Virus record (IMG/VR): IMGVR_UViG_3300024259_002152
Span: 62,001 to 126,000 of that record
Length of the DNA stretch: 64,000 nucleotides
Reading direction: 5' to 3' (one strand)
Shown: positions 30,439 to 58,301 of the stretch, piece after piece
Layout of the letters: each line of letters begins with the position of its first letter
Numbering within the stretch: position 1 is the stretch's first letter
Program-made: the position numbers and the translations under genes
Notes under the pieces: generated by a model
What the model saw: only the letters and a program-made list of their open reading frames with translations
Told to the model about the DNA's origin: nothing
The model's database searches: none

Positions 30439-30467
30439 TTAAAAGTGAAAAAATATCGATTTATAAT
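30439..30467 (+). promoter_or_regulatory. Putative promoter (motif copy 1): TTAAAAGTGAAA-...-TATAAT
   Basis: TTAAAA at 30439-44, 17-nt spacer, TATAAT at 30462-67; lies in the gap after the structural operon. Confidence 0.65.
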
Positions 30468-30505
30468 ATAGTTAATATTTTTGGTTTGTAAAATGGGAGA
30501 TAAAA

Positions 30506-30760
30506 ATGAGGTATAAAATAGGTGATAGAATTAAAATAAGGACCTGGGAAAATATGATGAAAGAGTATGGTTCTTTTCCTGATGGAAAAGAAATTATGCT
30601 TGATAGTCCATTATATTTTGCGTCCGAGGTAGAGGAAGAAATAAATAAAAATTTCCCAGATAGAATTTTAACAGTCTTAAGCGCAGTAAGTGGGTTTTAT
30701 ACAATGGAAAAAACCATTCATGCATTCACTGATGAGATGATAGAGGGATTAGTAGAATAA
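30506..30760 (+). CDS. Small KOW/SH3-like phage protein, paralog of 52684 and 53671, without C-terminal tag
   Basis: MRYKIGDRIKIRTWENM...DRILTV...FTDEMIEGLVE aligns with MKYKVGDKVRIKIWEDM...DRILTI...WTEDMIEGIVE. Confidence 0.7.
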   Translation: MRYKIGDRIKIRTWENMMKEYGSFPDGKEIMLDSPLYFASEVEEEINKNFPDRILTVLSAVSGFYTMEKTIHAFTDEMIEGLVE

Positions 30761-30770
30761 TATTAGATTT

Positions 30771-31478
30771 ATGATTATAGATATAATATTATTAACTTAC
30801 AATAATGTAGAAAATACTAAACAATGTATAAATAATCTTTACAAATTTACTGATAATTTTGGTTTAGTTATTTTAGATAATCACTCCACAGATGGTACTG
30901 TTGATTATTTGAAAAAAATATCAGACCAAAATGATAATATAACTTTATTCCTTTCTGATCTTAATTTGGGTATTATTAATGGCAGGAATAGTGCGTACAA
31001 ATTATCAAAAGGAACTGACTATATCGTTTTTCTCGATAATGATCAATATGTTCAAAAAGATTGGTTGGATAGTTATTTAAAATTAATGATAGATAAAGAA
31101 TTTGATTTGATTGGTTGTGAAGCATGGAAAATGAGAGAAAAAGATTTTTACCCATATAAAAAAATAATAGATAACAATGACACTTTTTCCTATGTCGGCG
31201 CTGGTGGATTAATGATTAAGAATAAGATATTCGAAAAATTAGGATTATTCGATGAAGATTATGATTTTATCTATTTTGAAGATCCTAGTTTATGCTTTAA
31301 GGCACATTATCAGGGATATAAAATAGGATGGAATTATAATCCAATAATAGACCATAATCATAAGGGGGCATTGTTAAGCAATGAGAATAGGAAATATTTT
31401 CTGAACAATTGGAAAGTATTTCAGAATAAATGGCAGGGAAAAAGAATCCCTATCTTCTCAAATACTGTTGAAAAGTGA
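30771..31478 (+). CDS. Glycosyltransferase family 2
   Basis: IILLTYN, ILDNHSTDGT, NLGIINGRN, YIVFLDND (DxD), FDEDYDFIYFED. Confidence 0.9.
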   Translation: MIIDIILLTYNNVENTKQCINNLYKFTDNFGLVILDNHSTDGTVDYLKKISDQNDNITLFLSDLNLGIINGRNSAYKLSKGTDYIVFLDNDQYVQKDWLDSYLKLMIDKEFDLIGCEAWKMREKDFYPYKKIIDNNDTFSYVGAGGLMIKNKIFEKLGLFDEDYDFIYFEDPSLCFKAHYQGYKIGWNYNPIIDHNHKGALLSNENRKYFLNNWKVFQNKWQGKRIPIFSNTVEK

Positions 31479-31502
31479 AAAAGTATCATATAAAAGTATA
31501 AT
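31468..31502 (+). promoter_or_regulatory. Putative promoter (copy 2), ATG at predicted +1
   Basis: TTGAAAAGTGAAA at 31468; ATG at 31503 is 35 nt downstream; the -10 position reads TAAAAG (weak). Confidence 0.6.
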
Positions 31503-32594
31503 ATGAAACTAGGAATATTTTGTAATTTTTCATATAAGCATGTTGGTGGCTCTGAAAATGTTATTAAGAACATATCGGACAGATTAGTCAACGATTTTGA
31601 TTATGAGGTAAATGTTTATAGTTTCAGCGTTAATGCTCCTTTTTACGAGAATAAGGTTAGATATTTTCCTTGTAAAAAGGGAGATGGACTGTTTGCTCAG
31701 ATTGCTCAAAACGACCATATCTTTATTTATAGTGATTCTTTTTGGCAGCTCGATACATTACTCCAAAATATCGATAAAATCGATTGTAGGGCATCCTTGG
31801 CACTCGTAGGTGCTTACCATTTACAATCTCATCCTGAATCTTTTAGATTATTAAAAGAGAATATAGAGAAATTTAATCTTATTACCCATTCTGAGACAAC
31901 TCCTGACTATAAGTGGTGTATTGACAATAACTTACCTGTTAAAGTGGTGCCCAACGGGGTTGATTTGTCTGAATTTTGGGAAAATAGAGTAAATTTTCGT
32001 GAAAAGTATAAAATAAAAGAAAAATATATTATTCTTAGCGTTTTTTCATATTTTTTTGGCAAAGGGTTTGAAATTCTTCCCAAAATAGCTGAAAAACTAT
32101 CAGAGCATTTAGATGATTTTTTAATTCTACAATGCTCAAACACCTCCCAGTACCCCTATGATAAACCATTTTTTGAGAGGACAAAAAAACAAAGTAGAGG
32201 ACTACCTATAAGGTTTTTAAGGGATATTCCTAGGGAAGATATTGTTTCGGCTTTTAATTGTTCTGATGTGTTTTTATCGCCAAGTAAGAAAGAAGTTGCT
32301 CCTATTGTTATTCTAGAATGTAGAGCGGCGAAATTGCCTTATGTTTCTTTTGCTGTGGGGAATGTTGGAGAACAAGGAGGAATTCCTTTGATAGTCCAAC
32401 AAAAGGATAATAAGGGTTATGCTATAGTTGAGAAGAGAGATATTGATCATTTTTCTGCTGCTATACTTCAACTATTGACCTGTAAAGATGAGAGATATAA
32501 AAATATAGTAATAGAAAAAGGACAACACTTTATAAACAACATTGATTGGGACAATATAGTTCTTTTGTATGATAGAGAATTTAGACATGAATAA
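31503..32594 (+). CDS. Glycosyltransferase family 4 (GT-B)
   Basis: GGSENV, VVPNGVDL, SDVFLSPSKKEVAPIVILECRAAKLPYV. Confidence 0.9.
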   Translation: MKLGIFCNFSYKHVGGSENVIKNISDRLVNDFDYEVNVYSFSVNAPFYENKVRYFPCKKGDGLFAQIAQNDHIFIYSDSFWQLDTLLQNIDKIDCRASLALVGAYHLQSHPESFRLLKENIEKFNLITHSETTPDYKWCIDNNLPVKVVPNGVDLSEFWENRVNFREKYKIKEKYIILSVFSYFFGKGFEILPKIAEKLSEHLDDFLILQCSNTSQYPYDKPFFERTKKQSRGLPIRFLRDIPREDIVSAFNCSDVFLSPSKKEVAPIVILECRAAKLPYVSFAVGNVGEQGGIPLIVQQKDNKGYAIVEKRDIDHFSAAILQLLTCKDERYKNIVIEKGQHFINNIDWDNIVLLYDREFRHE

Positions 32595-32901
32595 ATTAAT
32601 AGGAACTACTGTATTTTATTGGCATGATGCTAAAAAGGAAATGCCAAAGTATGATAGGCCAGTTCTCTTAAAAAGAGAGCCACGTGATAAAGGCAATCCA
32701 ACAAGAGAGAATTTTATTAGTGCATGTCGGAAAATAGATTGGTCCGACGGGCAGGATTATTGGGATTATGTTGGGAAGGTATTTGAAGAATATGAGTTTA
32801 ATGTTGTTGGTTGGGCATATCTGGCAGAAATGGTATCTAATGATATATCAGAGAATAAGACAAGTGAAATAAATGATAGATTTGAGATATTAGATTTATA
32901 G
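32569..32901 (+). CDS. DUF551-like small phage protein with C-terminal RFEILDL tag (start probably ATG 32587)
   Basis: WHDAKKEMP...VVGWAYL pattern; ends INDRFEILDL*. Confidence 0.65.
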   Translation: MIENLDMNKLIGTTVFYWHDAKKEMPKYDRPVLLKREPRDKGNPTRENFISACRKIDWSDGQDYWDYVGKVFEEYEFNVVGWAYLAEMVSNDISENKTSEINDRFEILDL

Positions 32902-32914
32902 AAAAGGAGAAAAA

Positions 32915-33103
32915 ATGAGCAAAACATGTAAAGAATGTAAAGGTAAGGGAAAGATAAAAAAGAAAGAATGTGATACCTGTCATGGGTTTGGATGGGTAGA
33001 ATGTCGCTGTGGGTCATATTGTTGTAAAGAGTGTAATCCAGCCAGTAATGAGGAATCAACTATGTTATTTCCTGGTTGTTCGTTCGGAAAGTGTAACGAT
33101 TAG
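32915..33103 (+). CDS. Small Cys-rich (DnaJ-type CxxCxGxG) zinc-finger protein
   Basis: CKECKGKG, CDTCHGFG, additional Cys; AGGAG RBS upstream. Confidence 0.65.
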   Translation: MSKTCKECKGKGKIKKKECDTCHGFGWVECRCGSYCCKECNPASNEESTMLFPGCSFGKCND

Positions 33104-33106
33104 ATT

Positions 33107-33820
33107 ATGAGCACTCCATTAGTTAGTGTAATTACGACAGCATATAATTGTGAAAAATATATAAAAGAGTCTATAAATTCTATTATTAATCAGACTTTTA
33201 GAGACTTTGAGATTGTCGTTTATAACGATGCTTCTACGGATAAAACGTGGGACATTGTTTTTCATATGGATTTATTTTGTGATCATAATATTTTTAGAGG
33301 AGATAAAAATGTGGGTTGTGGAGAAGGGAGAAATAGGGCGATAAAACAAGCAAGAGGGAAATATATAGCGATACAGGATGCTGATGATATAAGTCTTCCA
33401 GAGAGATTGGAGAAAGAAGTCAATTTTTTAGAAGAGAATGATGATATATTTTGTGTGGGAGCATGGGCCATAAAGATAAAAGAAGATGGTAGTTTTATCG
33501 AATCTATGACATATCCTCGTTCTGCACATGAAAAAATATATGAAGATATAATAGTTAAAAAAAATAATCCTATTATTGATCCTTCTTGTATGTATAGGAG
33601 GGGATTGTTTAATGAATTAGGGGGTTATGATGGTCGATGGAAACTAGTTCCTGATTTTAATCTGTGGGCTAGAGCGGCTAAAGCAGGTTTTAAATTTTTC
33701 AATTTTCAGGAAGCATTGGTGTATTATCGTCAACATCCTAATAGTGTGACAAATAAGAGTGAAATGGCTGTCGTTAGAGAGCATTACAGGATGTGTAAAG
33801 AGGTTTTAGGGAATAAATAA
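33107..33820 (+). CDS. Glycosyltransferase family 2
   Basis: PLVSVITTAYN, YNDASTD, ARGKYIAIQDADD, DFNLWAR. Confidence 0.92.
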   Translation: MSTPLVSVITTAYNCEKYIKESINSIINQTFRDFEIVVYNDASTDKTWDIVFHMDLFCDHNIFRGDKNVGCGEGRNRAIKQARGKYIAIQDADDISLPERLEKEVNFLEENDDIFCVGAWAIKIKEDGSFIESMTYPRSAHEKIYEDIIVKKNNPIIDPSCMYRRGLFNELGGYDGRWKLVPDFNLWARAAKAGFKFFNFQEALVYYRQHPNSVTNKSEMAVVREHYRMCKEVLGNK

Positions 33821-33876
33821 AGGTTTTTGATAAGATGTATTGGAATAATATAAATGGGATACTTTGATACGGAGAT

Positions 33877-34350
33877 ATGAATATGCAAGAGATACCCAAC
33901 TGGATTGTCAAAGTAGTCGAGACGGAAAAATTAGAATGTCGAAACTGTAAAATGGTATTTAGTGTTGATAATCTGATGTCAATTAGTGTTCAAGAAAGCA
34001 GTAAATCTCCTCATAAAGATACTTTATGTATAGGTTTATATTGTCATGACTGTAAAGAATTGATGATTTTTGAATTAAAAGAAATGAGTTTGATTGATTT
34101 TGCATTTGAGATACTAGACCAAGAGACATCTAATAAGATTCAGAAGAAATCCAAAGATGATTCTCCAGCATTGGCAAATAAATCAGGAAAAAAGAGAATC
34201 AAAAGAATAAATTCTAAAAGCAAAATAACACGTAAAGAGGTAGATGATATAAAGAAGTTTTTAGGTGATAAGAATTTATCTCATGAAGAATTTTTAATAG
34301 CTTTAGGGATGTTGCCAGAAGATATTAAGAAATATAATTATAAAAAATAG
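33877..34350 (+). CDS. Hypothetical protein with zinc ribbon
   Basis: CRNC...CHDC; Lys-rich C-terminus. Confidence 0.6.
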   Translation: MNMQEIPNWIVKVVETEKLECRNCKMVFSVDNLMSISVQESSKSPHKDTLCIGLYCHDCKELMIFELKEMSLIDFAFEILDQETSNKIQKKSKDDSPALANKSGKKRIKRINSKSKITRKEVDDIKKFLGDKNLSHEEFLIALGMLPEDIKKYNYKK

Positions 34351-34358
34351 AGAATAAC

Positions 34359-35414: not shown

Positions 35415-35420
35415 ATACCC

Positions 35421-35449
35421 TTGAAAAGTGAAAGTAATAGAAATATTAT
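35421..35449 (+). promoter_or_regulatory. Putative promoter (copy 3)
   Basis: TTGAAAAGTGAAA at 35421, 17-nt spacer, TATTAT at 35444-49; ATG at 35456. Confidence 0.65.
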
Positions 35450-35487
35450 TGTAGAATGTTTGGTTGTTAATTATCGAGGTAGATAAA

Positions 35488-35969: not shown

Positions 35970-37514
35970 TTGAGTACTAATCAGTTAATCCTACGCGTTG
36001 ATCATAATTCAACGTATGTAGCAGGTAGGATGAGCAGTGAAATATATGATAAATTTAAGAGAGAATTAGGTTATCTTCCAGAAAATTCTTTTTGGATGAT
36101 TAAGAATAGTTCTGAAAACGCTAAAGAACACGAGAAGTGGAAAAAAGAGTGGGACGGCAATATTTCTGCTGTTTGTTGGAATAAACAATTCTGCCATTGT
36201 CATATAAAAAAAAGCGGCTTACATTTTCAATCGGGATTACTATCTAAGGCGGTAGATTTTTTTAGGGCCAATGGAGTGTCCTTTAGAAGAATAGATATTA
36301 GGAGTAAAACTGAAAAAACAAATAGATATTCTATGTCTAGTGAATTTGAATCGAGGGATTATCAGCAGGATCTTATTGATAAAATAATAGGAACGCAGCA
36401 AATCCAAGGTATAGATAGAGGTATTATTAAGGCAGCAACAGGGTCTGGGAAAACTGGTATTGCTTGTGGTGTTATAGCAGGGGTAGGAGTGGCTCCTGCT
36501 GTATTTTATGTGCCTAGTATTGATCTCTTAAGACAGGCTAAGGATGAGCTAGAAAGATTTATAAGGCAAAATAATCTAGGTATAGAAGTTGGGATAATTG
36601 GTGGGGGCAGTAAGGATATAAAAGACATTAATGTTATGACCATACAAACAGCAGTTAGAGCATTGGGTGGAGTATGGGTGAAATTTGATGATGAAGATGA
36701 TACCAAAGATGATACGGACATTGATGATGTTAAAGAAAATGTTAGGGATTTAATTAGAAATTCAAAACTAATGATATGCGACGAAGTGCAACATTGGGCG
36801 GCTGAGACCTGCCAGATAATATCTGATGCTTCTTCTTCTTGTCAGTATAGGTATGGTTTATCGGCAACACCTTATAGAGATCAAGGAGATGATATATTAA
36901 TTCATGGATGCTTTGGAAAAACTATTCAGGATATTAGCGCTTCTTTTTTAATTAAGAAGGGATATCTTATTAAGCCTACAATCTATTTTATAAAAATTAG
37001 TAATATGAGAGGACTAAGGACTGCAACATATGCTAATGTTTATAAGCAAGCTATTATAGAAAATTCATATAGAAATAATAAAATAGTAGAAATGGCTAAT
37101 CGTTGTTTAGCGGGAGGTAGAAAAGTTCTTATTCTTGTGAAGCAAATAAAGCATGGAAAGATGTTGGAAAAATTAATGCCAGGAAGTGCTTTTATATATG
37201 GAGGCACAGCTAAAAAGAAAAGAAAATCTCATCTGGACCATATGAGGAAAGGAGATCCTCAGATTACTATTGCTAGTGTAATTTTCGATGAGGGTATTGA
37301 TGTTAGGCCTTTAGATACTTTGATTTTAGCAGGAGCGGGTAAATCTCCTACTAGAGCTTTGCAAAGAATAGGGAGAATCTTAAGACCTTATGAGGGTAAG
37401 AAAGATGCGATAGCTATTGATTTTATGGACAATTGTAAATACATGCAAAGTCATAGCAAAAAGAGGTTAAATATCTATAAAACAGAAGAAGAGTTTGAGA
37501 TTATAGGAGATTAG
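35970..37514 (+). CDS. Superfamily 2 DNA helicase (UvsW/XPB-like)
   Basis: AATGSGKT, ICDEVQH, GLSATPYR, FDEGIDV, QRIGRILR; TTG start after AGGAG. Confidence 0.92.
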   Translation: MSTNQLILRVDHNSTYVAGRMSSEIYDKFKRELGYLPENSFWMIKNSSENAKEHEKWKKEWDGNISAVCWNKQFCHCHIKKSGLHFQSGLLSKAVDFFRANGVSFRRIDIRSKTEKTNRYSMSSEFESRDYQQDLIDKIIGTQQIQGIDRGIIKAATGSGKTGIACGVIAGVGVAPAVFYVPSIDLLRQAKDELERFIRQNNLGIEVGIIGGGSKDIKDINVMTIQTAVRALGGVWVKFDDEDDTKDDTDIDDVKENVRDLIRNSKLMICDEVQHWAAETCQIISDASSSCQYRYGLSATPYRDQGDDILIHGCFGKTIQDISASFLIKKGYLIKPTIYFIKISNMRGLRTATYANVYKQAIIENSYRNNKIVEMANRCLAGGRKVLILVKQIKHGKMLEKLMPGSAFIYGGTAKKKRKSHLDHMRKGDPQITIASVIFDEGIDVRPLDTLILAGAGKSPTRALQRIGRILRPYEGKKDAIAIDFMDNCKYMQSHSKKRLNIYKTEEEFEIIGD

Positions 37515-37518
37515 GACA

Positions 37519-38472
37519 TTGATGATGGCACAAAAAGATGCTAAAGATATTCTCAGAGATATAAAGGCAGATATAGAAGGGGTAGACCCTAAAGACATAC
37601 AGTTTCAAGACTTACGTAAAAGAAGAAATAAAAAAAAGAAAGTAGAAAAATCTAATGAAAGTGAAAGTGGAAGTGGTATAATTGGAAACACTGAAGGTTT
37701 CTCACTTTTGGAAGTAGAGACTAAATGTTGCGATTATAGAGATATAAGTAAGAAAGGAAAGTTGAGAGAAAAGGGTAGTCTTGAGGAGTGGGGACCTTTT
37801 GATTTTTTTAAATTTGCTCATAAATTATATGTTAATCGATATCAGATAGAGTGGGATTTAAATATGGGGGGAAGTAGTCTTGAGATTAACCGGATTAAAG
37901 ATAAGTTTGTTGATGTTTTCGGTTATTGTTGTAATTTAATGATATATGATTATATTGTTTATTTTTTCGAATATCATATTGATTATTTTAAGAATAAAGA
38001 TGGTTTTTATTTTAGCCAAATGAAAACAGATTGGATAATTCTAACATTTCAAGAGACATATGATTTTAGAGAGCGTTTCGTTAATTATATGACGCAGAAA
38101 AAACAAAAGAATAAGAAATATCAATTAACACATGATGAAATTCAAAAATCTTATGATATGGGCGATACAACTTTAATTGGGAATTATGGAATTGTTATCG
38201 CTTTAAACTGGCTTTTGAAGATAAAGAAGATTAACAAAAAAGATGCGATAAAGGTTGTCGTTGATGCATGTAAAGATATGTATAAAAAGCATTTGATAGA
38301 TGTTGTCCAAAGCGCAACGGAGATATATTCTCCATATCCTGTTAATCTAATATTCAAAAGTCCTCAACTTGTTCTAAATAAAATAGATAAAAATATTAAA
38401 CTTAAAGTAGAGTTTAATGATAATAATCAAATGGAATTTTTACAAAAGGGAGATAATACGAAAGGTGCTTAA
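37519..38472 (+). CDS. Hypothetical protein
   Basis: 317 aa; basic N-terminus; TAATG-coupled to infC. Confidence 0.6.
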   Translation: MMMAQKDAKDILRDIKADIEGVDPKDIQFQDLRKRRNKKKKVEKSNESESGSGIIGNTEGFSLLEVETKCCDYRDISKKGKLREKGSLEEWGPFDFFKFAHKLYVNRYQIEWDLNMGGSSLEINRIKDKFVDVFGYCCNLMIYDYIVYFFEYHIDYFKNKDGFYFSQMKTDWIILTFQETYDFRERFVNYMTQKKQKNKKYQLTHDEIQKSYDMGDTTLIGNYGIVIALNWLLKIKKINKKDAIKVVVDACKDMYKKHLIDVVQSATEIYSPYPVNLIFKSPQLVLNKIDKNIKLKVEFNDNNQMEFLQKGDNTKGA

Positions 38473-38983: not shown

Positions 38984-39012
38984 TTGAAAAGTGAAAAGTA
39001 AGTTGTTAATTT
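38984..39012 (+). promoter_or_regulatory. Putative promoter (copy 4)
   Basis: TTGAAAAGTGAAA at 38984; -10 position TAATTT at 39007-12. Confidence 0.6.
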
Positions 39013-39043: not shown

Positions 39044-40702
39044 ATGAAACCGATTAGTAAAAAAGTGAGCGAAGCGACATTAGACGAGATGTGTACGAAA
39101 AAATTTAAGGATGATTTTACAAATATTTTACGTTGTCGTTATCCTTTATTTTATATCACTCACAATGAGGAAAAAAGATTAACACAATTTTTGACTCACT
39201 TTTGTAAGGTCAAAGGTTATGAATGCTTTTTATGGGATAGCTATAATGGGCTTGTAAATTTGTTTAGTGGAGAAGAGGTGGCAGGTACTACTGAGGATCT
39301 GAAAAATAATCCTCTGGCTATTCTCGATCATGTTATTGGGGAAGGTAGAACTTTTGAGAAAAAGAAAACAAGTGTTCTAGAGAAGAAGGAGAAGGGTTGT
39401 AATGGGATAATTTATGTCCTGTTGGACTTTTTTAATTTTATCCAAGCAAATCCAGATATTGAAAGACGTTTTGTAGCATTGTCTAATTTGAATTCTATTG
39501 TTAGTACTGTTTGTACAGGTCCGTATTATCAGTCCACCGATGTGATTCAAAACATTTTACCGATGATTGAGTTTCCTTTTGCTAACAAAAAAGAAATTCG
39601 TCATGCTTTATATGATGTGGTTCATGGTGCTGAAAGAAAGATTCCTACTATTGCTAAAGAGACTAAGGCAATGGAAGAAGAACTGATTAGTGCTGTTTCT
39701 GGTTTGACTCTTATGGAGGCACAAACGGCATTTAGTAAATCTCTTGTGTCGCGCCATACTTGGGACACAGATCTCATTTTAGAGGAAAAGAAACAGATTA
39801 TCAGTAAAAGTGGCATGTTGGAGTATTTTGATAAAACTGTTTCGATGGAAGATATCGGAGGATTAAAGAATTTAACCACATGGATAAAAGAGAGAAAAAA
39901 ATGTTTTTCACAAGAGGCAGAAGATTATGGGATAAAGAAGCCTAGGGGTCTGTTGACTATTGGTATGCCTGGGTGCGGGAAGTCTTTAGTATGTAAAGCC
40001 ATTAGTAGTGTATGGAAAATGCCTTTATTAAGGTTGGACTTTGGTAAGCTTTTTGGGAATCTTGTTGGTGATTCTGAGAAGAATGCTCGGGAAGCCATTA
40101 AACAGGCCGAAGCAATTGCTCCCTCGATTTTGTGGATAGATGAAATTGAGAAAGCTATTTCTGGAGTTAATTCTAGTGGTCGCTCAGATGGAGGAACTAC
40201 AAGTCGAGTGTTGTCCACTTTCCTAACATGGATGCAGGAAAAAACCTCTCCTGTATTTGTGGTTGCTACTGCTAATAATCATGATGCGATACCTCCTGAA
40301 TTTTTGAGAGCAGGTCGTTTTGACGAGATCTTTTTTGTTGATTTGCCGAATATAGATGAGAGAGAAGAGATTTTTAATGTTCTTCTCAGACTTAGGGAAA
40401 TTAACACCAAAAAGATTAACATACCTTTATTGGCAGAAAAAAGTTCTGGGTATAGTGGTGCCGAGATTGAAAAAGGGATCGATAATGCTATGCTAGTCGG
40501 CTTTAGCGATTCAGCTAGGCCAATTGATAGTGACGACATTGTTACTGCTCTTGGTCAATTTAAATCTTTGTTTGAAATGAGACAAGCAGATTTTGAAGAG
40601 CTTAGAGAATGGGCAACAAATAAATGTCGTATGGCAAACGATGAACCTAAGAGAATCGTTAATCTAGGACAAGATAATTCTGCTAAAGATTTGGATTTAT
40701 GA
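39044..40702 (+). CDS. Ycf46-like AAA+ ATPase (degenerate N-terminal AAA domain plus intact C-terminal AAA domain)
   Basis: GMPGCGKS, ILWIDEIEK, ATANN...PPEFLRAGRFDEIFFVDLP; ends KDLDL*. Confidence 0.88.
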   Translation: MKPISKKVSEATLDEMCTKKFKDDFTNILRCRYPLFYITHNEEKRLTQFLTHFCKVKGYECFLWDSYNGLVNLFSGEEVAGTTEDLKNNPLAILDHVIGEGRTFEKKKTSVLEKKEKGCNGIIYVLLDFFNFIQANPDIERRFVALSNLNSIVSTVCTGPYYQSTDVIQNILPMIEFPFANKKEIRHALYDVVHGAERKIPTIAKETKAMEEELISAVSGLTLMEAQTAFSKSLVSRHTWDTDLILEEKKQIISKSGMLEYFDKTVSMEDIGGLKNLTTWIKERKKCFSQEAEDYGIKKPRGLLTIGMPGCGKSLVCKAISSVWKMPLLRLDFGKLFGNLVGDSEKNAREAIKQAEAIAPSILWIDEIEKAISGVNSSGRSDGGTTSRVLSTFLTWMQEKTSPVFVVATANNHDAIPPEFLRAGRFDEIFFVDLPNIDEREEIFNVLLRLREINTKKINIPLLAEKSSGYSGAEIEKGIDNAMLVGFSDSARPIDSDDIVTALGQFKSLFEMRQADFEELREWATNKCRMANDEPKRIVNLGQDNSAKDLDL

Positions 40703-47456: not shown

Positions 47457-47717
47457 ATGCCAATTTATGAGTACGAACACCCTGAGACAGGGGAGATATT
47501 TAGAGAAATAAGAAAAGTGAAAGAGAGAGATAATCCTTTTATATCTAAAGATGGAAAGATATGTAAAAGGATAACATTTCCTGGGGGAATAAAAGGTTGG
47601 AAGAAGAATAGGGAAGTTTTCGAAGCTGATCCTGCGTATGTTAAGCAGTCCAACCCCAAGTTCGTTCAATTCCAAGACGGTCATAAAGAGAGATATGACT
47701 CTACAAAACACTGTTGA
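47457..47717 (+). CDS. FmdB-family zinc-ribbon-like protein lacking most of the Cys ligands
   Basis: MPIYEYEHPETGEIF resembles MPIYEYxCxxCG of FmdB proteins. Confidence 0.65.
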   Translation: MPIYEYEHPETGEIFREIRKVKERDNPFISKDGKICKRITFPGGIKGWKKNREVFEADPAYVKQSNPKFVQFQDGHKERYDSTKHC

Positions 47718-47748
47718 AAAGTGAAAGATAAAAAGACATAATAGATGG
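47714..47748 (+). promoter_or_regulatory. Putative promoter (copy 5), ATG at predicted +1
   Basis: TTGAAAAGTGAAA at 47714, 17-nt spacer, CATAAT at 47737-42, ATG at 47749. Confidence 0.7.
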
Positions 47749-48108
47749 ATGAGATTTATACGTAAAGAGTTTATAGTTACTACTATATTTAATAAAGAAT
47801 TAACAGAGAGGGACGAAGTCCTAATCGTTTTTAACAATTTATTAAATGAGAGGATAGAGTTCGCTATGACTATGAAGAAGTATATGCCTATGCAACAAGA
47901 CTATTTCAATATGAGTTTTGAAAAAGTTAGGGTGAAGAGAATCAACGATGATGATACTGTTGATTTGTTAGCTTTCAAGAGTGGGGTTAAAACTAACATA
48001 AAGGGGGTTCCTTTTGATCATATCATAGAAGTAAATGCGACTACTAAAAAACATAAAATTTTAGATATTGACTCCGATTTAAATCGTTTTGATATATTAG
48101 ACTTGTAA
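47749..48108 (+). CDS. Hypothetical protein with C-terminal tag (NRFDILDL)
   Basis: 119 aa. Confidence 0.7.
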   Translation: MRFIRKEFIVTTIFNKELTERDEVLIVFNNLLNERIEFAMTMKKYMPMQQDYFNMSFEKVRVKRINDDDTVDLLAFKSGVKTNIKGVPFDHIIEVNATTKKHKILDIDSDLNRFDILDL

Positions 48109-53402: not shown

Positions 53403-53404
53403 AA

Positions 53405-53671: not shown

Positions 53672-53940
53672 TGAAATATAAAACAGGAGATAAAGTAAGG
53701 ATAAAGACAAAGGGTCAGATGGAGAAAGAATTTGGCTATTATGACGAAGAAAGCAAATTCATAAATTGTGATCAACATTTTTCTTCTATTATGGAAGAGG
53801 CACTGAATCGGCTAGATAGTGATAGAATTCTTACTATTAATCATTTAGAATATTTTCAAAATGTTAATTATTATTACATGAGGGAAATAGAGGGATTTTG
53901 GACTGATGATATGATAGATGAGTTAGTAAATGATAAATAG
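53671..53940 (+). CDS. KOW/SH3-like small protein; tag lies just downstream in the +1 frame (possible frameshift)
   Basis: MKYKTGDKVRIK...; 53930-53962 reads MINRFEILDI* in the +1 frame. Confidence 0.7.
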   Translation: MKYKTGDKVRIKTKGQMEKEFGYYDEESKFINCDQHFSSIMEEALNRLDSDRILTINHLEYFQNVNYYYMREIEGFWTDDMIDELVNDK

Positions 53941-53971
53941 ATTTGAGATATTGGATATATAGGAATAAAAG

Positions 53972-54505
53972 ATGAGTGAAGTAAGTAAATTATCAGAAGA
54001 AGATCTTAAAAAAATAGCGGATATGATGGTTGATCAGGCAGTAGTGCCGTCTCCTAAAGCAATTATTAAAATAGAAAATGAGACTGTTCCTGAAACTGAT
54101 ACAATTAAAAGATATAAAAGGTCTAATAAACAATTACGGACAAAAGTAGAAAGACAGATTAGCGAAATAGCCAAACAGGAAGCAGAGATAAAAGAGTTGC
54201 AGGTAAGTGCTTATCTTAATACGGATGAGGCTAAAGATACGATCAATAAAAAATTAAGAGAAGAAAAACAAGCATTAAAGCTAAAAATGGAAGAGCAGGG
54301 ATTAAATTTTGAAAAAGAGCGCAAAGAAATAATAGAGACAAGAAGTAAGATTTATGAGTTAGAACGAACAATAGGGAGTAATAAGAAAGAGATTGAGGGG
54401 CTAAGAACAGAAGTGGATCAATTAATGAATGATAATAGAGAACTTCAAGCAGAGATAGATGCTAGAATTAAAGCAGATGGTAGATTTAATATAATGGATT
54501 TATAA
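53972..54505 (+). CDS. Coiled-coil protein with tag (GRFNIMDL)
   Basis: 177 aa, heptad-rich. Confidence 0.75.
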   Translation: MSEVSKLSEEDLKKIADMMVDQAVVPSPKAIIKIENETVPETDTIKRYKRSNKQLRTKVERQISEIAKQEAEIKELQVSAYLNTDEAKDTINKKLREEKQALKLKMEEQGLNFEKERKEIIETRSKIYELERTIGSNKKEIEGLRTEVDQLMNDNRELQAEIDARIKADGRFNIMDL

Positions 54506-54506
54506 T

Positions 54507-54541
54507 TTGCAAAGTGAAAGTTTTGAAAATATATTTAGAGA
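54507..54541 (+). promoter_or_regulatory. Putative promoter (copy 6) for DnaE C-fragment, ATG at predicted +1
   Basis: TTGCAAAGTGAAA at 54507, 17-nt spacer, TATATT at 54530-35, ATG at 54542. Confidence 0.7.
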
Positions 54542-56515
54542 ATGGCAGATTTAGCAGATATTAAAAAAGAGATAATAGGATATATCACTAAAAAGCACTC
54601 CAAGAGCGATAAATTACCAAAAATTATTTCTAAAGTGAAAGAAGAACTCGATGTTTTAGAATCGACTGACGGTTTAGAAGGCAAGAATAATTTAGAAGTA
54701 TTTTATAATACATGGAAGAGCCACAAGGGAGAGGTGGGTCATAAAAATGACATTAATAGTTGGGCTGCTTTCTTCCTGGGGATAACGGAAGTAAAACCTG
54801 ATGGAGATTTTCTTCCGACTAGGCGTGCTTTTGCTAGGGCGGGATTCCCTGATATTGACACTGATTTTGATTACGAGAATAGGGATACTGTTTATTCTTA
54901 TATAATTGATAAGTATGGAAGAGAGAATGTAGGGAATATTGGCACTCACGGATTATTGAAATTTAAATCATGTGTGACCAGGGTGACTAAAGCTTTAGAT
55001 CTAGCAAATGCTTATCACAAAGGTAGTGATGCTTTTGTTAGCGAAAATGCTGCTAAGGTAACAGAAATTTTATCTCCTTTTCCGAAAATGGGACTAGTGA
55101 AAGTTACTGACGATGATGGTGAAAGTTACCTTATAAAAACTTTCCAAGATGCTTATGATCATTGTCCAGATTTTAGACATTATGTTGACAAATATGAGAG
55201 TAGTCATTTCAAAGAATATATGGAGCATATAGAAGGGACATTTGCTAATTTCGGCTGCCATGCTGCAGGAATAGTTGTTTCTGATATTCCTCTTGATGAA
55301 ATTGCTCCTTTGAGAAATGCTAAAAAGGGAGTTCTTGCCACTCAATTCCCTAATGAAGATTTGGAATCAATAGGTCTTATTAAATTTGATGATCTTGCTC
55401 TTTCTACTTTATCCATTGTGAAAAAAACAGTAAAAATGGTAAAAGAACATTGGGGAATAGAAGTAGATCTAGAAAATCTGCCTATGGAAGATGATGCTAC
55501 TTTCGAATTATATCGTAGAGGAAATTTGGGTGGAGTTTTTCAGTGTGAAAATAGTGGCATGCAAAAAACTATGAGAGATATAGGAGTAGATCGTTTTGAA
55601 GATATTATAGCGGGACTAGCTCTTTATCGTCCTGGACCTATGGATAGTATTCCTGAGTATTGTGCAAGAAAGCATGAAGAAAATGAAATTAGTTACTTTC
55701 ATAGGTCAATTGAGCCATTTGTAAAATCTTATTTAGAAAGCACATATGGAATCTTATGTTATCAAGAGCAAGTTATGCAGATTTGTAATAGTCTTGCAGG
55801 TTTTACTATTACTGATGGCTACATAATGATTAAGTCGATTGGTAAGAAAAAAGAATACTTAATGAAGCGTTTTGAAGAACAATTTATTTTAGGTTGTGAA
55901 AGAAATAAAGTGCCGTCAGATGTTGCTAAGCAATATTGGGATAAATTTATAGTTCCTTTCTCTGGTTATGGGTTTAATTTGGCTCATAGTGCTTGTTATG
56001 GTTATAATTCTTACACTACAGCATATCTAAAAGCTAATTATCCTGATGAATTTATATGTTCTTTATTAGATGTGACGATAAATAGTTCTCAGGGTGAAAG
56101 GTATGATAAAGTTTCAGCATTTGAGAGGGAATTTAAAAGAAAGATGGGTGTTAAATTTCTTCCCAGAGATATAAATAAGTGTAAAGTATCATTTACTATC
56201 GAAAAAAGAAAAGATCTTGCAGAAGGTGTAAAAAAAACAGAAATACGTCCTAGTCTTTTATGTAAAGGGCTTTTAACTAAATCTGCCAAGAACATAGAAG
56301 AAAATCAACCTTATGAAGATATGAGAGATATAGTTAGAAAAACTGATTCTTCGTTAGTTGATACTAGGGTTATAGACGCTTTGGCTACAGGGGGATATTT
56401 AGGTAAAAAGCATATAGAAGACTCTTCTGTTATAGTAAAAGATTTTGTCATGATCAGAGAGGATATGAAAAAAACTGCTAAAAGAGGGGTAGAAACTATT
56501 GATATATTTGGTTAA
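54542..56515 (+). CDS. dnaE: DNA polymerase III alpha, C-terminal fragment (catalytic Asp residues, fingers, HhH)
   Basis: GFPDIDTDF, YIIDKYG, GCHAAGIVVS, GLIKFDDLAL, GVFQCE, LALYRPGPM, TYGILCYQEQVMQI, YGFNLAHS, LKANYP. Confidence 0.93.
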   Translation: MADLADIKKEIIGYITKKHSKSDKLPKIISKVKEELDVLESTDGLEGKNNLEVFYNTWKSHKGEVGHKNDINSWAAFFLGITEVKPDGDFLPTRRAFARAGFPDIDTDFDYENRDTVYSYIIDKYGRENVGNIGTHGLLKFKSCVTRVTKALDLANAYHKGSDAFVSENAAKVTEILSPFPKMGLVKVTDDDGESYLIKTFQDAYDHCPDFRHYVDKYESSHFKEYMEHIEGTFANFGCHAAGIVVSDIPLDEIAPLRNAKKGVLATQFPNEDLESIGLIKFDDLALSTLSIVKKTVKMVKEHWGIEVDLENLPMEDDATFELYRRGNLGGVFQCENSGMQKTMRDIGVDRFEDIIAGLALYRPGPMDSIPEYCARKHEENEISYFHRSIEPFVKSYLESTYGILCYQEQVMQICNSLAGFTITDGYIMIKSIGKKKEYLMKRFEEQFILGCERNKVPSDVAKQYWDKFIVPFSGYGFNLAHSACYGYNSYTTAYLKANYPDEFICSLLDVTINSSQGERYDKVSAFEREFKRKMGVKFLPRDINKCKVSFTIEKRKDLAEGVKKTEIRPSLLCKGLLTKSAKNIEENQPYEDMRDIVRKTDSSLVDTRVIDALATGGYLGKKHIEDSSVIVKDFVMIREDMKKTAKRGVETIDIFG

Positions 56516-56519
56516 TAGT

Positions 56520-56548
56520 TTGCAAAGTGATTGTTATTATATTAGAAG
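56520..56548 (+). promoter_or_regulatory. Putative promoter (copy 7)
   Basis: TTGCAAAGTGATT at 56520; -10 position TAGAAG at 56543-48; ATG 40 nt downstream. Confidence 0.55.
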
Positions 56549-56559
56549 AGTAATTATAT

Positions 56560-56742
56560 ATGAATATTATAAAGTGTCCTAAGTGTGAGAGCACAGACTT
56601 ATTCATATATGATACAAAAGGATGCATTGAGGATGGGGAGATCATCGAGGAAACAGAATGTTTGTGTTGTGATTTCACTTTTACTGTTAAAGCTCAATTA
56701 TCAAAAATTGAGATAGAGATAGGAATAAAAATAGGAGATTAA
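56560..56742 (+). CDS. Small zinc-ribbon protein
   Basis: CPKC...CLCC. Confidence 0.65.
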   Translation: MNIIKCPKCESTDLFIYDTKGCIEDGEIIEETECLCCDFTFTVKAQLSKIEIEIGIKIGD

Positions 56743-56744
56743 TT

Positions 56745-57056
56745 ATGGCAGAAGAAAATAAGACTACTTTGAGATTAGAGATAGATAGAACTATTCAGCC
56801 GAAACAATTTGAGTCGATTAAAGTTATCGTAGATGTGCAGGAAAGTTTTTATTGGAAAGATGAAAAAGATAGAACGAATAAGATAAAAGCTCATACTGAA
56901 AAAATATCAGAAGATTTTGTTTCTACCTTTAATCATGTTGTTAAGAGGATAGGGGAAGAGGATAGGTGTATTGGTAAGGTTATCACTGGTGGTGATGTTT
57001 CTATTGAGGAAAAAAAACAAATTATTTCTTCAGATGATGAGTTTGATTTTGATTAA
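56745..57056 (+). CDS. Hypothetical protein with acidic tail (DDEFDFD)
   Basis: 103 aa. Confidence 0.65.
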   Translation: MAEENKTTLRLEIDRTIQPKQFESIKVIVDVQESFYWKDEKDRTNKIKAHTEKISEDFVSTFNHVVKRIGEEDRCIGKVITGGDVSIEEKKQIISSDDEFDFD

Positions 57057-57068
57057 TAGGTGTAAAGT

Positions 57069-58256
57069 ATGACAAGTGAAAATAGTCTAAAAGAATTTGA
57101 AGAGATGTTTGATCTATCTTCTAAGGATGAAGATAACGGTCAAGCAGAGGAATATGGACATAGTGCTAATTCTGAGGCATCTTTTGATGAATTAGAGGGA
57201 GAGTTAAGCAATGATATAAAAGATGTTTCTGATAAAGGGGCAGCTTTAGAAGTTGTAGAAAATGTTCATGATATTATAAGAGATGTTTCTTCTAAAACCG
57301 AAGAAGAGCAAGAGGCAGATACTGTTTCTCCTGAATCGGAAAAATCAGAGGAGGTAGATACAGATAGTATAGCAGGTATTGTAGAGAGCATGCAGGGTGA
57401 GGATGATTTTGATTGTTTGCCAGATCAGTGTATTCCAGAAAAAAATACTGAGAAGGAAGAAGTATCAGAAGAAGTAGTCGATCTTGCTAAAAATATTGCT
57501 GATTTTCATACAGAAGCAAAGAAAGATGGAAAGGAGGAGGAAACGTCTTTTGATCAAGTTAATGTAGAGAGCGATTCTATGCTTGATGGAGATCAGGTTA
57601 AATGGTCTCTAAAGAGTCCTGCTGGTATGTATGATCCATTTTATAGGCAAAAGAAAAGGGTATTGGATAGTTGTCTTGTTGGTGGCCAAGTGGAATTTAC
57701 TAGGTGGGACAAAGAGTTACAAGATGCCCAGGTTGATGTAGTTAGTGAAGTATTCGATAAGGAAGTAATTACAAAACAGATGGAAGATGTTCAGCAGTTT
57801 AGGAACAGAGTTAAATACATTGGTGTAAGAGTTAATAATCAACATTTTTTATTCGATAGGTTTGTGCCTTTGCTAAGGGGATTTTTGGCACGTATTCAAT
57901 ATCTCAAACCCGTTTTAAAACAAGATGGTCTTATTCTAGAGCATATGGGTGATGTTGAAATGTATTTTGAGAGATTAAGAGGTTTATATAAATCTGTCTC
58001 TGATACTGAAAAGAATTTAGCAGCAGCTTATGAAATGTTGAGTAGAAAAGTCACTATTTGTATGGATTTGCCTCCTGTTGAGAGACATGGTAAACCAGAG
58101 TATAAATCATATCGTTCTAAATTTTCGGAAAATACAATAAATACAGAAGCTGCAGCAGCATCTTCTGAGATGGACGGTTTTGATGATCTTCCTGATAATG
58201 CTAAAGCAGGTGATTCAGGGAATAAAAACGGGACAATAGGATGGGATGATATTTAA
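57069..58256 (+). CDS. Acidic low-complexity N-terminus plus helical C-domain (possible UvsY-like recombination mediator)
   Basis: Helical/coiled-coil C-half and position before SSB and RecA; mediator role is inferred from context only. Confidence 0.4.
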   Translation: MTSENSLKEFEEMFDLSSKDEDNGQAEEYGHSANSEASFDELEGELSNDIKDVSDKGAALEVVENVHDIIRDVSSKTEEEQEADTVSPESEKSEEVDTDSIAGIVESMQGEDDFDCLPDQCIPEKNTEKEEVSEEVVDLAKNIADFHTEAKKDGKEEETSFDQVNVESDSMLDGDQVKWSLKSPAGMYDPFYRQKKRVLDSCLVGGQVEFTRWDKELQDAQVDVVSEVFDKEVITKQMEDVQQFRNRVKYIGVRVNNQHFLFDRFVPLLRGFLARIQYLKPVLKQDGLILEHMGDVEMYFERLRGLYKSVSDTEKNLAAAYEMLSRKVTICMDLPPVERHGKPEYKSYRSKFSENTINTEAAAASSEMDGFDDLPDNAKAGDSGNKNGTIGWDDI

Positions 58257-58264
58257 TTTTTAGA

Positions 58265-58301
58265 AATCACTTTAAAAGTGATTGTAAAACGATTATAAAA
58301 T
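58265..58301 (+). promoter_or_regulatory. Putative promoter (copy 8) overlapped by palindrome AATCACTT-TAA-AAGTGATT
   Basis: TTAAAAGTGATT at 58272; inverted repeat 58265-72 / 58276-83; TATAAAAT downstream. Confidence 0.6.

What the first reader, a model, noticed from the sequence alone, without database searches (positions are those of the whole stretch)
30439..58301. Eight-copy extended -35 promoter motif TT[G/A][A/C]AAAGTGA[A/T][A/T]
Seen in sequence at 30439, 31468, 35421, 38984, 47714, 54507, 56520 and 58272, always at or just after a gene end. The hexamer 17 nt after the -35 position is TATAAT, TAAAAG, TATTAT, TAATTT, CATAAT, TATATT or TAGAAG; copy 8 has TATAAA/TAAAAT at 16/18 nt. The invariant AAAGTGA just downstream of the -35 start is not part of the sigma70 consensus. 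I saw no copy in the gaps of the 30-kb structural operon. Inference: an early/middle regulon read by a host sigma plus a phage factor, or by a phage sigma.
Basis: partly seen in the sequence, partly recalled or inferred. Interest (0 to 1): 0.6.

Follow-up and report, generated by a model that had tools for sequence, protein, structure and literature searches.

The report
Megaphage early/middle promoter family
The repeated TTGAAAAGTGAAA motif is real: it belongs to a promoter family used by a group of uncultured marine giant phages to switch on replication, nucleotide-metabolism and sigma-factor genes, an ordinary kind of signal with a previously undescribed sequence.

Summary
Six of the eight copies match the stated pattern (0.21 expected). 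Copies 1 and 8 are variants offset by one base.

The window lies in a 351-kb record of a marine huge phage. The eight copies belong to a family of about 40 sites in that genome. I counted 116 intergenic or gene-end sites in four related genomes, one of them a complete 548-kb genome.

- **Consensus:** an A/T-rich stretch, then TTGA(A)AAGTGAAAG, 8-9 bases, then TATAAT. This is a housekeeping-type -35 (TTGAAA) and -10 at 16-17 nt. The AAGTGA box makes the upstream half a tandem TGAAA(A)G-TGAAAG repeat.
- **Placement:** sites always point the way the genes run. They are 15-49 times denser in or next to non-coding DNA.
- **Conservation:** sites sit at orthologous positions although the flanks have diverged.
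- **Genes served:** helicase, AAA ATPase, Pol III alpha, SSBs, clamp, glycosyltransferases, tRNAs and every phage sigma gene checked.
- **Other classes:** tail-module gaps carry a sigma-H-type promoter instead. ORFan arrays carry a third motif, TTCCAGACAA.
- **No RNA polymerase gene** was found.

Best reading: these are early/middle promoters read by host core RNA polymerase, most likely with the host primary sigma. The box probably serves as a phage-specific tag read by an unidentified factor. No RNA data exist, so transcription start sites are inferred.

The parts
30438..30467 (+). Class A promoter, copy 1 (variant): cTTAAAAGTGAAAA, box AAGTGA at 30443-30448, -10 TATAAT at 30462-30467. It precedes ORF 30506-30760 (84 aa, no family hit), followed by a GT2 glycosyltransferase at 30771-31478.
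   Evidence: Orthologues of the 84-aa ORF in G004 and G005 lie elsewhere and lack the motif.
31468..31502 (+). Class A promoter, copy 2: TTGAAAAGTGAAA, box at 31473-31478. The -10 is ambiguous: TATAAA at 31489-31494 (10 nt after the box), TAAAAG at 31491-31496 (12 nt) or TATAAT at 31497-31502. ATG of the GT1 glycosyltransferase is at 31503. The motif overlaps the last codons of ORF 30771-31478.
   Evidence: Orthologues in G005 and G004 have AAGTGATTG, 9 nt, TATAA(A/G)AGTATAATATG. G000 has two bases fewer in the spacer.
35421..35449 (+). Class A promoter, copy 3: TTGAAAAGTGAAAG, -10 TATTAT at 35444-35449. It heads ORF 35464/35488-35808 (114 aa) and the helicase gene 35970-37514.
   Evidence: Conserved upstream of the orthologous ORF in G005, G004 (with TATAAT) and G002.
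37655..37682 (+). Function not established.
   Evidence: (the only one of 344 genic TATAAT with the box).
38984..39012 (+). Class A promoter, copy 4: TTGAAAAGTGAAAA, -10 TAATTT at 39007-39012. It precedes the AAA ATPase gene 39044-40702.
   Evidence: G005 has the same box and the same TAATTT. G004 has the box with TATAAT. G002 has lost it.
47714..47742 (+). Class A promoter, copy 5: TTGAAAAGTGAAAG, -10 CATAAT at 47737-47742. The ATG of ORF 47749-48108 lies exactly 6 nt after the -10, so the mRNA is predicted to be leaderless. The ORF ends in NRFDILDL.
   Evidence: Identical architecture in G005; absent in G004 and G002.
54507..54535 (+). Class A promoter, copy 6: TTGCAAAGTGAAAG, -10 TATATT at 54530-54535. 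The ATG of Pol III alpha (54542-56515) lies 6 nt after the -10, with no Shine-Dalgarno sequence, so the mRNA is predicted to be leaderless.
   Evidence: The box and a TATnnT -10 are conserved upstream of the orthologue in G004, G005, G003 and G001.
56520..56548 (+). Class A promoter, copy 7: TTGCAAAGTGATTG, -10 TAGAAG at 56543-56548. It precedes the small ORF 56560-56742 (60 aa).
   Evidence: Conserved directly after the Pol III alpha stop in G004, G005, G002 and G003.
58262..58299 (+). Class A promoter, copy 8 (variant): TTTAAAAGTGATTGT, -10 TATAAA at 58294-58299, embedded in the palindrome AATCACTTTAAAAGTGATT (58263-58281). It precedes the gp32-like SSB gene 58339-59043.
   Evidence: AAGTGATTGT, 8 nt, TATAA(A/T) is conserved in G005, G004 and G002. 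The palindrome is kept only in G005.
33821..33850 (+). Contrast element, not part of the family: a class C (sigma-H-type) promoter, AGGTTTT, 15 nt, GAATAA, upstream of ORF 33877-34350.
   Evidence: Conserved in G005 and G004.

Best explanation
**What it is.** The motif is the upstream half of a promoter family (here 'class A') of a clade of uncultured marine huge phages. These phages have no RNA polymerase of their own and transcribe with the host core enzyme.

**Anatomy (shown).**
- An A/T-rich stretch.
- A -35-like TTGAAA.
- An adjoining GTGAAAG. Together these form the tandem repeat TGAAA(A)G-TGAAAG.
- A -10 hexamer 12 nt (sometimes 11) after AAGTGA. That gives a -35/-10 spacer of 16-17 nt.
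- An A at about +1. In a subset this A is the A of a leaderless ATG.

**Role (shown by gene content and exclusion).** The family serves the non-structural early/middle genes: replication, nucleotide metabolism, DNA modification, tRNAs and the phage's own sigma genes. Tail-module genes use a sigma-H-type promoter. ORFan arrays use a third motif.

**Mechanism (inferred).**
- The -35 and -10 hexamers are read by a holoenzyme carrying the host's primary sigma. This places class A at the top of a sigma cascade.
- The near-invariant AAGTGA box, at about -30 to -25, is not contacted by a primary sigma in known holoenzymes. It is most likely read by an unidentified phage-encoded protein sitting beside sigma region 4. 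Such a tag would distinguish phage promoters from host promoters, for activation or for timed shut-off.
- The window copies are the subclass with a 17-nt spacer and a degenerate -10. They are probably weaker or more factor-dependent (delayed-early/middle) than the roughly 17 copies with a perfect TATAAT elsewhere in the genome.

**My odds.**

| Claim | Probability |
|---|---|
| Promoter family of early/middle genes | about 0.9 |
| Host primary sigma reads the hexamers | about 0.65 |
| A separate factor reads the box | about 0.45 |
For: **Enrichment, strand and position.**
- 6 matches against 0.21 expected in the window.
- 17 forward and 0 reverse strict matches in the 351-kb genome.
- AAAGTGA is 12 times enriched in intergenic DNA.
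- TTGA(A)AAGTGA is 15-49 times denser in or next to non-coding DNA in four genomes.
- All five reverse-strand sites in G004 precede minus-strand genes.

**Fixed -10.**
- Of 116 intergenic sites, 59 have a perfect TATAAT and 87 have at least 5 of 6 at the expected offset. Random intergenic positions give 0.6% and 7.7%.
- 19 of 72 intergenic TATAAT carry the box 11-13 nt upstream, against 1 of 344 genic TATAAT.

**Conservation.**
- The box and -10 are kept upstream of the sigma-a gene in four genomes whose sigma-a proteins are 29-52% identical, with unalignable flanks.
- They are also kept upstream and downstream of Pol III alpha, and upstream of the SSB, AAA ATPase, orf114, GT1 and orf60 orthologues.

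**Indirect support for the start site.** The distance from the -10 to the first long-ORF ATG peaks at exactly 6 nt: 8 sites at 6, none at 4-5.

**Gene content.**

**Dependence on host core polymerase.**
- No beta or beta-prime domain and no single-subunit RNA polymerase was found.
- No beta-prime domain was found in the complete 548-kb relative either.
- Three sigma-like ORFs are present here and several in the relatives.

**Cascade logic.**
- Sigma-a and sigma-b lie behind a perfect class A promoter. A 281-aa sigma in G004 lies behind TTGAAAAGTGA. A 191-aa sigma in G004 lies behind TTGCAA, 17 nt, TATAAT with an AAAGTAGA box.
- Distinct classes exist for phage sigmas to read. Class C is AGGwwTT, 14/15 nt, GAAT, found only at that spacing. 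It matches the published sigma-H consensus (PMC8510167), and a sigma-H-like phage sigma is present. Class B is described.
Against: - No transcript data exist. All 24 runs holding the DNA are seawater DNA runs, so no start site is demonstrated.
- The host is unknown, so its own promoter preference cannot be compared.
- The AAGTGA box is unexplained by known primary-sigma contacts, and no candidate reader protein was identified. AsiA and MotA C-terminal domain searches were negative.
- The phage encodes at least three sigma factors. One of them could read an extended -35 with positive autoregulation.
- Class B promoters head dense arrays of small ORFans, which is typical of immediate-early regions. 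Class B might therefore be the true host-read class.
- The window copies have weak -10 hexamers, which in AT-rich DNA are individually unremarkable.
- No terminators precede the window copies, so the downstream genes could also be served by read-through.
- Site counts rest on my own simple ORF models, not on a curated annotation.
Confidence: 0.6

Rival explanations
1. Class A is read by one of the phage-encoded sigma factors (sigma-a, which is WhiG/FliA-like, or sigma-b, which is ECF-like in region 4). Its region 4 would recognise the whole TTGAAAAGTGAAAG as an extended -35. The regulon would then be 'middle', and the host-read early class would be class B or the few TTGACA promoters.
For: - Three sigma-like ORFs in this genome.
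- The box is as conserved as the hexamers.
- No bacterial genome shows the full motif recurrently.
- Class B heads dense arrays of ORFans, an immediate-early-like layout.
- Canonical TTGACA, 16/17 nt, TATAAT promoters also exist.
Against: - Every sigma gene examined lies behind class A or its close variant. None was found behind class B. The sigma would have to drive itself.
- A perfect TATAAT and TTGAAA at 16-17 nt is the housekeeping signature. Known phage sigmas (SPO1 gp28 and gp34, T4 gp55; from general knowledge) use clearly different -10 elements.
- Classes B and C already offer targets for the phage sigmas, and class C pairs naturally with the sigma-H-like sigma-c.
Confidence: 0.22
2. 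Host primary sigma alone is sufficient, and there is no extra factor. The box would be an extended consensus that raises promoter strength through DNA shape, spacer contacts or a second -35 register (GTGAAA). This would resemble the long consensus of T4 early or T5 early promoters.
For: - The box creates a second -35-like hexamer, GTGAAA, 6-7 nt downstream. In some copies a good -10 lies 16-18 nt after it: 31475, 16 nt, TATAAT; also 30445 and 35428.
- A/T-rich, UP-element-like DNA lies upstream.
- Phage early promoters with extended consensus read by unmodified host polymerase are well known (general knowledge).
Against: - Nearly all TTGnnn, 16/17 nt, TATAAT promoters carry the box or its AAAGTAGA variant. 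That is far tighter than strength tuning usually needs.
- The box holds across genomes whose proteins are only 30-70% identical, while the spacers randomise.
- The 3' part of the box (AAAG or TTGT) is conserved gene by gene.
Confidence: 0.2
3. The motif is primarily an operator for a dimeric repressor or another non-promoter element (a replication or packaging repeat, or a mobile promoter cassette spread by recent duplication).
For: - Copy 8 lies in a perfect 19-nt palindrome, AATCACTTTAAAAGTGATT. The palindrome is also present in G005.
- The copies are very similar to one another.
Against: - Only copy 8 is palindromic, and the palindrome is lost in G004 and G002 while the box and -10 are kept.
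- Strict strand polarity following gene direction.
- A fixed distance to a -10 and to start codons.
- Flanks are not similar between copies, so this is not a duplicated cassette.
Confidence: 0.04

Closest known systems
Housekeeping (sigma-70 / sigma-A) bacterial promoters, especially strong phage early promoters with a long consensus (T4 early, T5 early, SPO1 early)
   Same: - The -35 TTGAAA matches TTGACA at 5 of 6 positions.
- The -10 is TATAAT, with a 16-17 nt spacer and A/T-rich DNA upstream.
- The promoters sit in front of early functions and of the phage's own regulators, and many copies are near-consensus.
   Different: - A near-invariant AAGTGA(AAG) box sits immediately after the -35, so that the upstream half is a tandem TGAAA(A)G repeat.
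- The preferred spacer is 16 nt.
- A subset is leaderless.
- Whether unmodified host polymerase suffices is untested.
T4 middle promoters (MotA box at -30 plus a sigma-70 -10; sigma appropriation by AsiA and MotA)
   Same: - A conserved box centred near -30, with a tolerance of one base relative to the -10.
- A housekeeping-type -10.
- Service to replication and nucleotide-metabolism genes.
   Different: - The box sequence differs: AAGTGA rather than TGCTT.
- A recognisable TTGA -35 is retained.
- No AsiA or MotA C-terminal domain homologue is found in six related records.
Sigma cascades of large Firmicute phages (SPO1: host sigma-A early, gp28 middle, gp33/34 late)
   Same: - Several phage sigma genes and no phage RNA polymerase.
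- At least three promoter classes partitioned between gene modules.
- Sigma genes placed behind the housekeeping-type class.
   Different: - The sigmas are only distantly related to characterised ones. The best solved-structure hits are WhiG and sigma-H at E = 1e-5.
- The class consensus sequences are different.
- The pairing of sigma and class is inferred, not shown.

Membership tests
Housekeeping sigma-70/sigma-A type promoter | A -35 hexamer resembling TTGACA | tested here: met
   TTGAAA, TTGCAA or TTTAAA in all copies. The four-genome logo shows TTGA at high information content.
Housekeeping sigma-70/sigma-A type promoter | A -10 hexamer resembling TATAAT, 16-18 nt downstream of the -35 | tested here: met
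   59 of 116 sites have a perfect TATAAT and 87 of 116 have at least 5 of 6 at the expected offset, against 0.6% and 7.7% at random intergenic positions. The window copies score 3-6 of 6 at 17 nt.
Housekeeping sigma-70/sigma-A type promoter | Transcription starts 6-8 nt downstream of the -10 | tested here: inconclusive
   There are no RNA runs. The only support is indirect: the start ATG of long ORFs peaks at exactly 6 nt after the -10 (8 sites at 6, none at 4-5), which is consistent with leaderless mRNAs.
Housekeeping sigma-70/sigma-A type promoter | Recognised by a holoenzyme with the primary sigma of the host | not testable with these tools
   The host is unknown. The genome-contig scan gave only scattered single hits.
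T4-type middle promoter (sigma appropriation) | A MotA box (TGCTT core) at -30 replacing the -35 | tested here: not met
   The box is AAGTGA and a TTGA -35 is retained.
T4-type middle promoter (sigma appropriation) | The phage encodes AsiA and MotA | tested here: not met
   Pfam AsiA (PF09010) and MotCF (PF09158) have no match at E <= 1 in six records, including the complete 548-kb genome. Analogues undetectable by sequence are not excluded.
Promoter of a phage-encoded alternative sigma (SPO1 gp28/gp34-like, ECF-like) | The phage encodes sigma factors | tested here: met
   Three sigma-like ORFs: genome 266813-267364, 267905-268621 and 225469-226203.
Promoter of a phage-encoded alternative sigma (SPO1 gp28/gp34-like, ECF-like) | Consensus elements distinct from the housekeeping -35/-10 (for example ECF AAC/CGT, or sigma-H AGGA/GAAT) | tested here: not met
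   Class A keeps TTGAAA and TATAAT. By contrast class C does show the sigma-H-type AGGwwTT, 14 nt, GAAT.
Operator of a dimeric helix-turn-helix repressor | Dyad symmetry shared by the copies | tested here: not met
   Only copy 8 is palindromic, and the palindrome is not conserved in G004 or G002.

The most novel reading that the evidence does not exclude
The AAGTGA box (a tandem TGAAAG repeat abutting the -35) may be the docking site of a new, sequence-unrelated analogue of the T4 MotA/AsiA sigma-appropriation system. In this reading a phage protein re-targets a host primary-sigma holoenzyme to tagged phage promoters. It would operate in a clade of marine megaphages that also runs a multi-sigma cascade: a sigma-H-type late class, plus a TTCCAGACAA class.
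Probability: 0.25. Interest if true: 0.65.

Novelty: new variant of a known kind. Interest (0 to 1): 0.45.

Why it matters
Huge phages from metagenomes are almost entirely unannotated at the regulatory level. This case yields a clean, clade-wide promoter grammar from sequence alone:

- **Class A:** a housekeeping-like promoter carrying an unexplained invariant box.
- **Class B:** TTCCAGACAA, in front of arrays of ORFans.
- **Class C:** a sigma-H-type promoter, in a phage that also encodes a sigma-H-like factor.

This grammar does several things:

- It allows temporal classes to be assigned to hundreds of genes of unknown function.
- It hints at a low-GC, sigma-H-using (Firmicute- or Fusobacterium-like) host.
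- It defines a concrete target, the box, for finding a new polymerase-redirecting factor.

The promoters could also be tested directly as portable parts.

Tried and rejected
- **Cultured relatives.** Megablast of 20 kb against cultured phage records found nothing. tblastn with Pol III alpha and the AAA ATPase found only distant relatives, below 36% identity. No annotated relative is available.
- **RNA evidence.** I therefore did not use read laying, because contigs cannot show start sites.
- **Host from the motif.** A scan of 185,579 species genomes for TTGAAAAGTGAAA, 9 nt, TATAAT gave 27 scattered hits, mostly single hits in AT-rich Clostridia MAGs. One 2.2-kb contig binned with an Asgard MAG has two hits and is probably a stray phage fragment. 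No host taxon emerged.
- **Generic promoter and terminator scans.** These were uninformative in this AT-rich DNA, and no terminator precedes the window copies.
- **Literature.** The motif strings appear only as primers or in eukaryotic contexts. Marine megaphage, moraphage, phage G and huge-phage papers contain nothing on these promoters.
- **PHROG scan of the giant ORFs** in window 139-30427 found no structural family. 'Structural operon' therefore rests only on the tail-like genes just upstream of the window.
- **Repressor-operator reading** rejected, because only one copy is palindromic.
- **Sigma appropriation of the T4 type** rejected as a membership claim.
- **Not used.** I did not use the large protein searches, structure prediction or complex prediction, because the claim does not rest on them. 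No alternative genetic code was used.

Full report
**1. Where the window lies.** The window is bases 62001-126000 of a 350,866-bp IMG/VR virus record that CheckV estimates to be 73% complete. GC content is 33%. G strongly exceeds C, and more than 90% of ORFs are on the + strand. The same DNA occurs in 24 seawater or marine metagenome runs, and none is RNA. No cultured phage is close.

**2. Checking the observation.**
- The stated pattern occurs six times in the window, all on the + strand, against 0.21 expected.
- The copies reported at 30439 and 58272 are variants offset by one base.
- All eight sit at or just after a gene end, 30-65 nt before the next start codon.
In this AT-rich DNA, however, a generic -35/-10 scan finds as many 'promoters' as in shuffled sequence. 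The hexamers by themselves prove nothing.
- A ninth copy with a perfect TATAAT lies inside ORF 37519-38472.

**3. The family is genome-wide.**
- In the whole record the strict 13-mer occurs 17 times forward and never in reverse.
- AAAGTGA is the most enriched class of intergenic heptamer, at 12-fold.
- Aligned on AAGTGA, the sites fall into three geometries:

| Geometry | Spacer | Where found |
|---|---|---|
| TTGA-AAGTGA, 12 nt, TATAAT | 16 nt | elsewhere in the genome |
| TTGAA-AAGTGA, 11 nt, TATAAT | 16 nt | elsewhere in the genome |
| TTGAA-AAGTGA, 12 nt, TAnnnn | 17 nt | all the window copies |

- The upstream half reads as a tandem repeat, TGAAA(A)G-TGAAAG.
- Nineteen of 72 intergenic TATAAT hexamers carry the box at the right distance, against 1 of 344 genic ones.
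- A handful of TTGACA, 16/17 nt, TATAAT promoters lack the exact box. Several of them carry AAAGTAGAA at the same place.

**4. The family is clade-wide and positionally conserved.**
- Relatives were found through Pol III alpha and through the motif itself.
- They include a complete 548-kb genome (G004), a 298-kb record (G005) and a 219-kb record (G002), all assembled from fetched tiles. An 88-kb record (G003) is also related.
- In the searches on the records as stored, motif counts in the direction of the genes versus the opposite direction are 39/6, 27/1, 14/0 and 5/0.
- Over four genomes I count 116 intergenic or gene-end sites. Of these, 59 have a perfect TATAAT at the expected offset and 87 have at least 5 of 6. 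Random intergenic positions give 0.6% and 7.7%.
- The motif is 15-49 times denser in or beside non-coding DNA.
- The five opposite-strand sites of G004 all precede opposite-strand genes.
- The box and -10 are retained upstream of the sigma-a gene in four genomes, although those proteins are only 29-52% identical and the flanks cannot be aligned.
- The box and -10 are also retained at these orthologous sites:
  - before and after Pol III alpha;
  - before the gp32-like SSB, where the subtype is AAGTGATTGT;
  - before the AAA ATPase;
  - before orf114, GT1 and orf60.
- The closest relative, G005, even keeps the weak -10 hexamers of the window copies: TAATTT, CATAAT, TATATT.

**5. What the family drives.**
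- In the window: GT2 and GT1 glycosyltransferases, a helicase operon, an AAA ATPase, Pol III alpha, a small zinc-ribbon-like ORF and a gp32-like SSB.
- Elsewhere in the genome:
  - a macro-domain protein;
  - a HAD hydrolase;
  - an RlaP-like protein;
  - a beta-clamp-like protein;
  - a ThyA-like protein;
  - a second AAA ATPase;
  - a bacterial-type SSB;
  - an N6/N4 DNA methylase;
  - a LAGLIDADG endonuclease;
  - the sigma-a/sigma-b operon;
  - the head of a 28-tRNA array.
- The predicted 5' untranslated region has a median of 33 nt.
- In a subset the ATG lies exactly 6 nt after the -10: 8 sites at 6 nt and none at 4-5. This subset includes the window copies at 47714 and 54507 and their G005 orthologues. 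It implies leaderless mRNAs and independently supports the placement of the -10 and the start site.

**6. Other promoter classes and the transcription machinery.**
- I found no beta, beta-prime or single-subunit RNA polymerase. The T7-type search had no positive control. The complete relative also lacks a beta-prime domain.
- The genome encodes three sigma-like proteins:

| Protein | Length | Best match |
|---|---|---|
| sigma-a | 183 aa | WhiG, E = 1e-5 |
| sigma-b | 238 aa | region 4 only, ECF-like |
| sigma-c | 244 aa | a sigma-H structure, E = 1e-5 |

- **Class B.** The consensus is aaaaTTCCAGACAAyGnGTTT, 10 nt, TAnnnT. It has 22 copies at 285-350 kb and heads mostly small ORFans. It is abundant in G004 (35 copies) and G005 (53 copies).
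- **Class C.** The consensus is AGGwwTT followed by GAAT. In intergenic DNA of the four genomes this pair occurs only at a spacing of 14 nt (12 times) or 15 nt (3 times). It never occurs at any spacing from 6-13 or 16-21 (single matches at 22 and 24), whereas the genic distribution is flat. This equals the published sigma-H consensus RNAGGAWWW / RNNGAATWW (PMC8510167).
- Class C or the looser AGGwTTT motif occupies gaps in the tail-like module just upstream of the window. That module holds a minor tail protein and a tape-measure-like protein. One class C copy is in the window at 33821.
- Every sigma gene examined lies behind class A or its AAAGTAGA variant.

**7. Interpretation.**
- Shown: class A is a conserved, oriented, gene-proximal bipartite signal with housekeeping-type hexamers, serving non-structural genes.
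- Inferred: it is read by host core polymerase with the host primary sigma, and it stands at the top of a cascade that produces the phage sigmas for classes B and C.
- The box occupies about -30 to -25. A primary sigma makes no base-specific contacts there in known holoenzymes (general knowledge). Its conservation is as strong as that of the hexamers. I therefore think a further reader is likely: a phage protein next to sigma region 4, acting as activator or timed repressor.
- None was identified. AsiA and MotA are absent by sequence.
- The rivals are a phage sigma with an extended -35, host polymerase alone, and an operator or other repeat. They are weighed in the structured fields.

**8. Novelty and limits.**
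- The motif strings are not in the searchable literature as phage signals. The kind of element, a phage temporal-class promoter, is well known.
- Limits: no RNA evidence, an unknown host, home-made ORF models, and an incomplete source genome.
- The description of the first 30 kb of the window as a 'structural operon' is plausible from context but unverified.

Noticed in passing
window ORF ends at 32901, 47203, 48108, 49162, 52153, 52687, 53010 and 53402; 25 ORFs genome-wide: Twenty-five otherwise dissimilar, mostly small ORFs end in the same C-terminal heptapeptide, [N/D/S]RF[E/D]ILD[L/I]-stop. They are clustered in early/middle regions. The tail is also present in relatives, for example on the ORF upstream of Pol III alpha in G004, G005 and G002. 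It looks like a shared docking or targeting tail (clamp-binding-like or a degron?). The peptide is not in the literature searched.
   Followed up: partly
genome 285-350 kb (outside the window; loci L039-L042): A second promoter-like family, aaaaTTCCAGACAAyGnGTTT, 10 nt, TAnnnT, has 22 copies here, 35 in G004 and 53 in G005. It is spaced every 300-900 bp in front of small ORFans and some tRNAs.
   Followed up: partly
window 33821-33850; genome 25172, 262825 and 346606; sigma-c at genome 225469-226203: Sigma-H-type bipartite promoters (AGGwwTT, 14/15 nt, GAATwt) occur at a strictly fixed spacing. A sigma-H-like phage sigma gene lies between the clamp-loader and beta-clamp-like genes. This suggests a late class read by sigma-c and a low-GC, Firmicute- or Fusobacterium-like host.
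   Followed up: partly
window 47737-47751 and 54530-54544: The ATG of ORF 47749 and of Pol III alpha (54542) lies 6 nt after the -10, with no Shine-Dalgarno sequence. This is conserved in G005. The mRNAs are predicted to be leaderless. Across four genomes there is a peak at exactly 6 nt.
   Followed up: yes
relatives G005:33679-37679, G002:68674-71149, G003:7979-12758: Pol III alpha is one intact 657-aa ORF here and in G004. In three relatives it is split into two or three pieces separated by inserted DNA (introns, inteins or homing endonucleases?).
   Followed up: no
window 58263-58281: A perfect 19-nt palindrome, AATCACTTTAAAAGTGATT, overlaps promoter copy 8 in front of the gp32-like SSB gene. 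It is kept in G005 but not in G004 or G002. It may be a gene-specific operator.
   Followed up: partly
window 139-30427: Nine tightly packed ORFs, including proteins of 2221, 1967 and 2075 aa. Of the eight scanned against PHROGs (the 2075-aa ORF was not scanned), seven have no match and the 752-aa ORF matches only families of unknown function. Their structural nature is inferred only from the tail-like genes upstream of the window.
   Followed up: partly
genome 29222, 35547 and 52824 (L027, L028); genome 7341 (L026): Several paralogous HNH endonuclease genes are interspersed in the tail-like module. A LAGLIDADG endonuclease lies behind a class A promoter.
   Followed up: no
genome 264209, 283323, 304876, 320727, 327297 and 340858: Canonical TTGACA/TTGCAA, 16/17 nt, TATAAT promoters without the exact box. 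Several carry AAAGTAGAA at the same position, which suggests a degenerate box consensus AAAGTrrAA.
   Followed up: partly
L090 (2,212-bp contig binned with an Asgard archaeon MAG): Two exact class A promoters within 2.2 kb. This is probably a mis-binned fragment of a related phage rather than archaeal DNA.
   Followed up: no
genome 327905-337500 (L041 10405-20001): An array of 28 tRNA genes lies downstream of a perfect class A promoter (genome 327162) and of a TTGACA, 17 nt, TATAAT promoter (327297). One is a tRNA-like gene with a two-base anticodon call.
   Followed up: no
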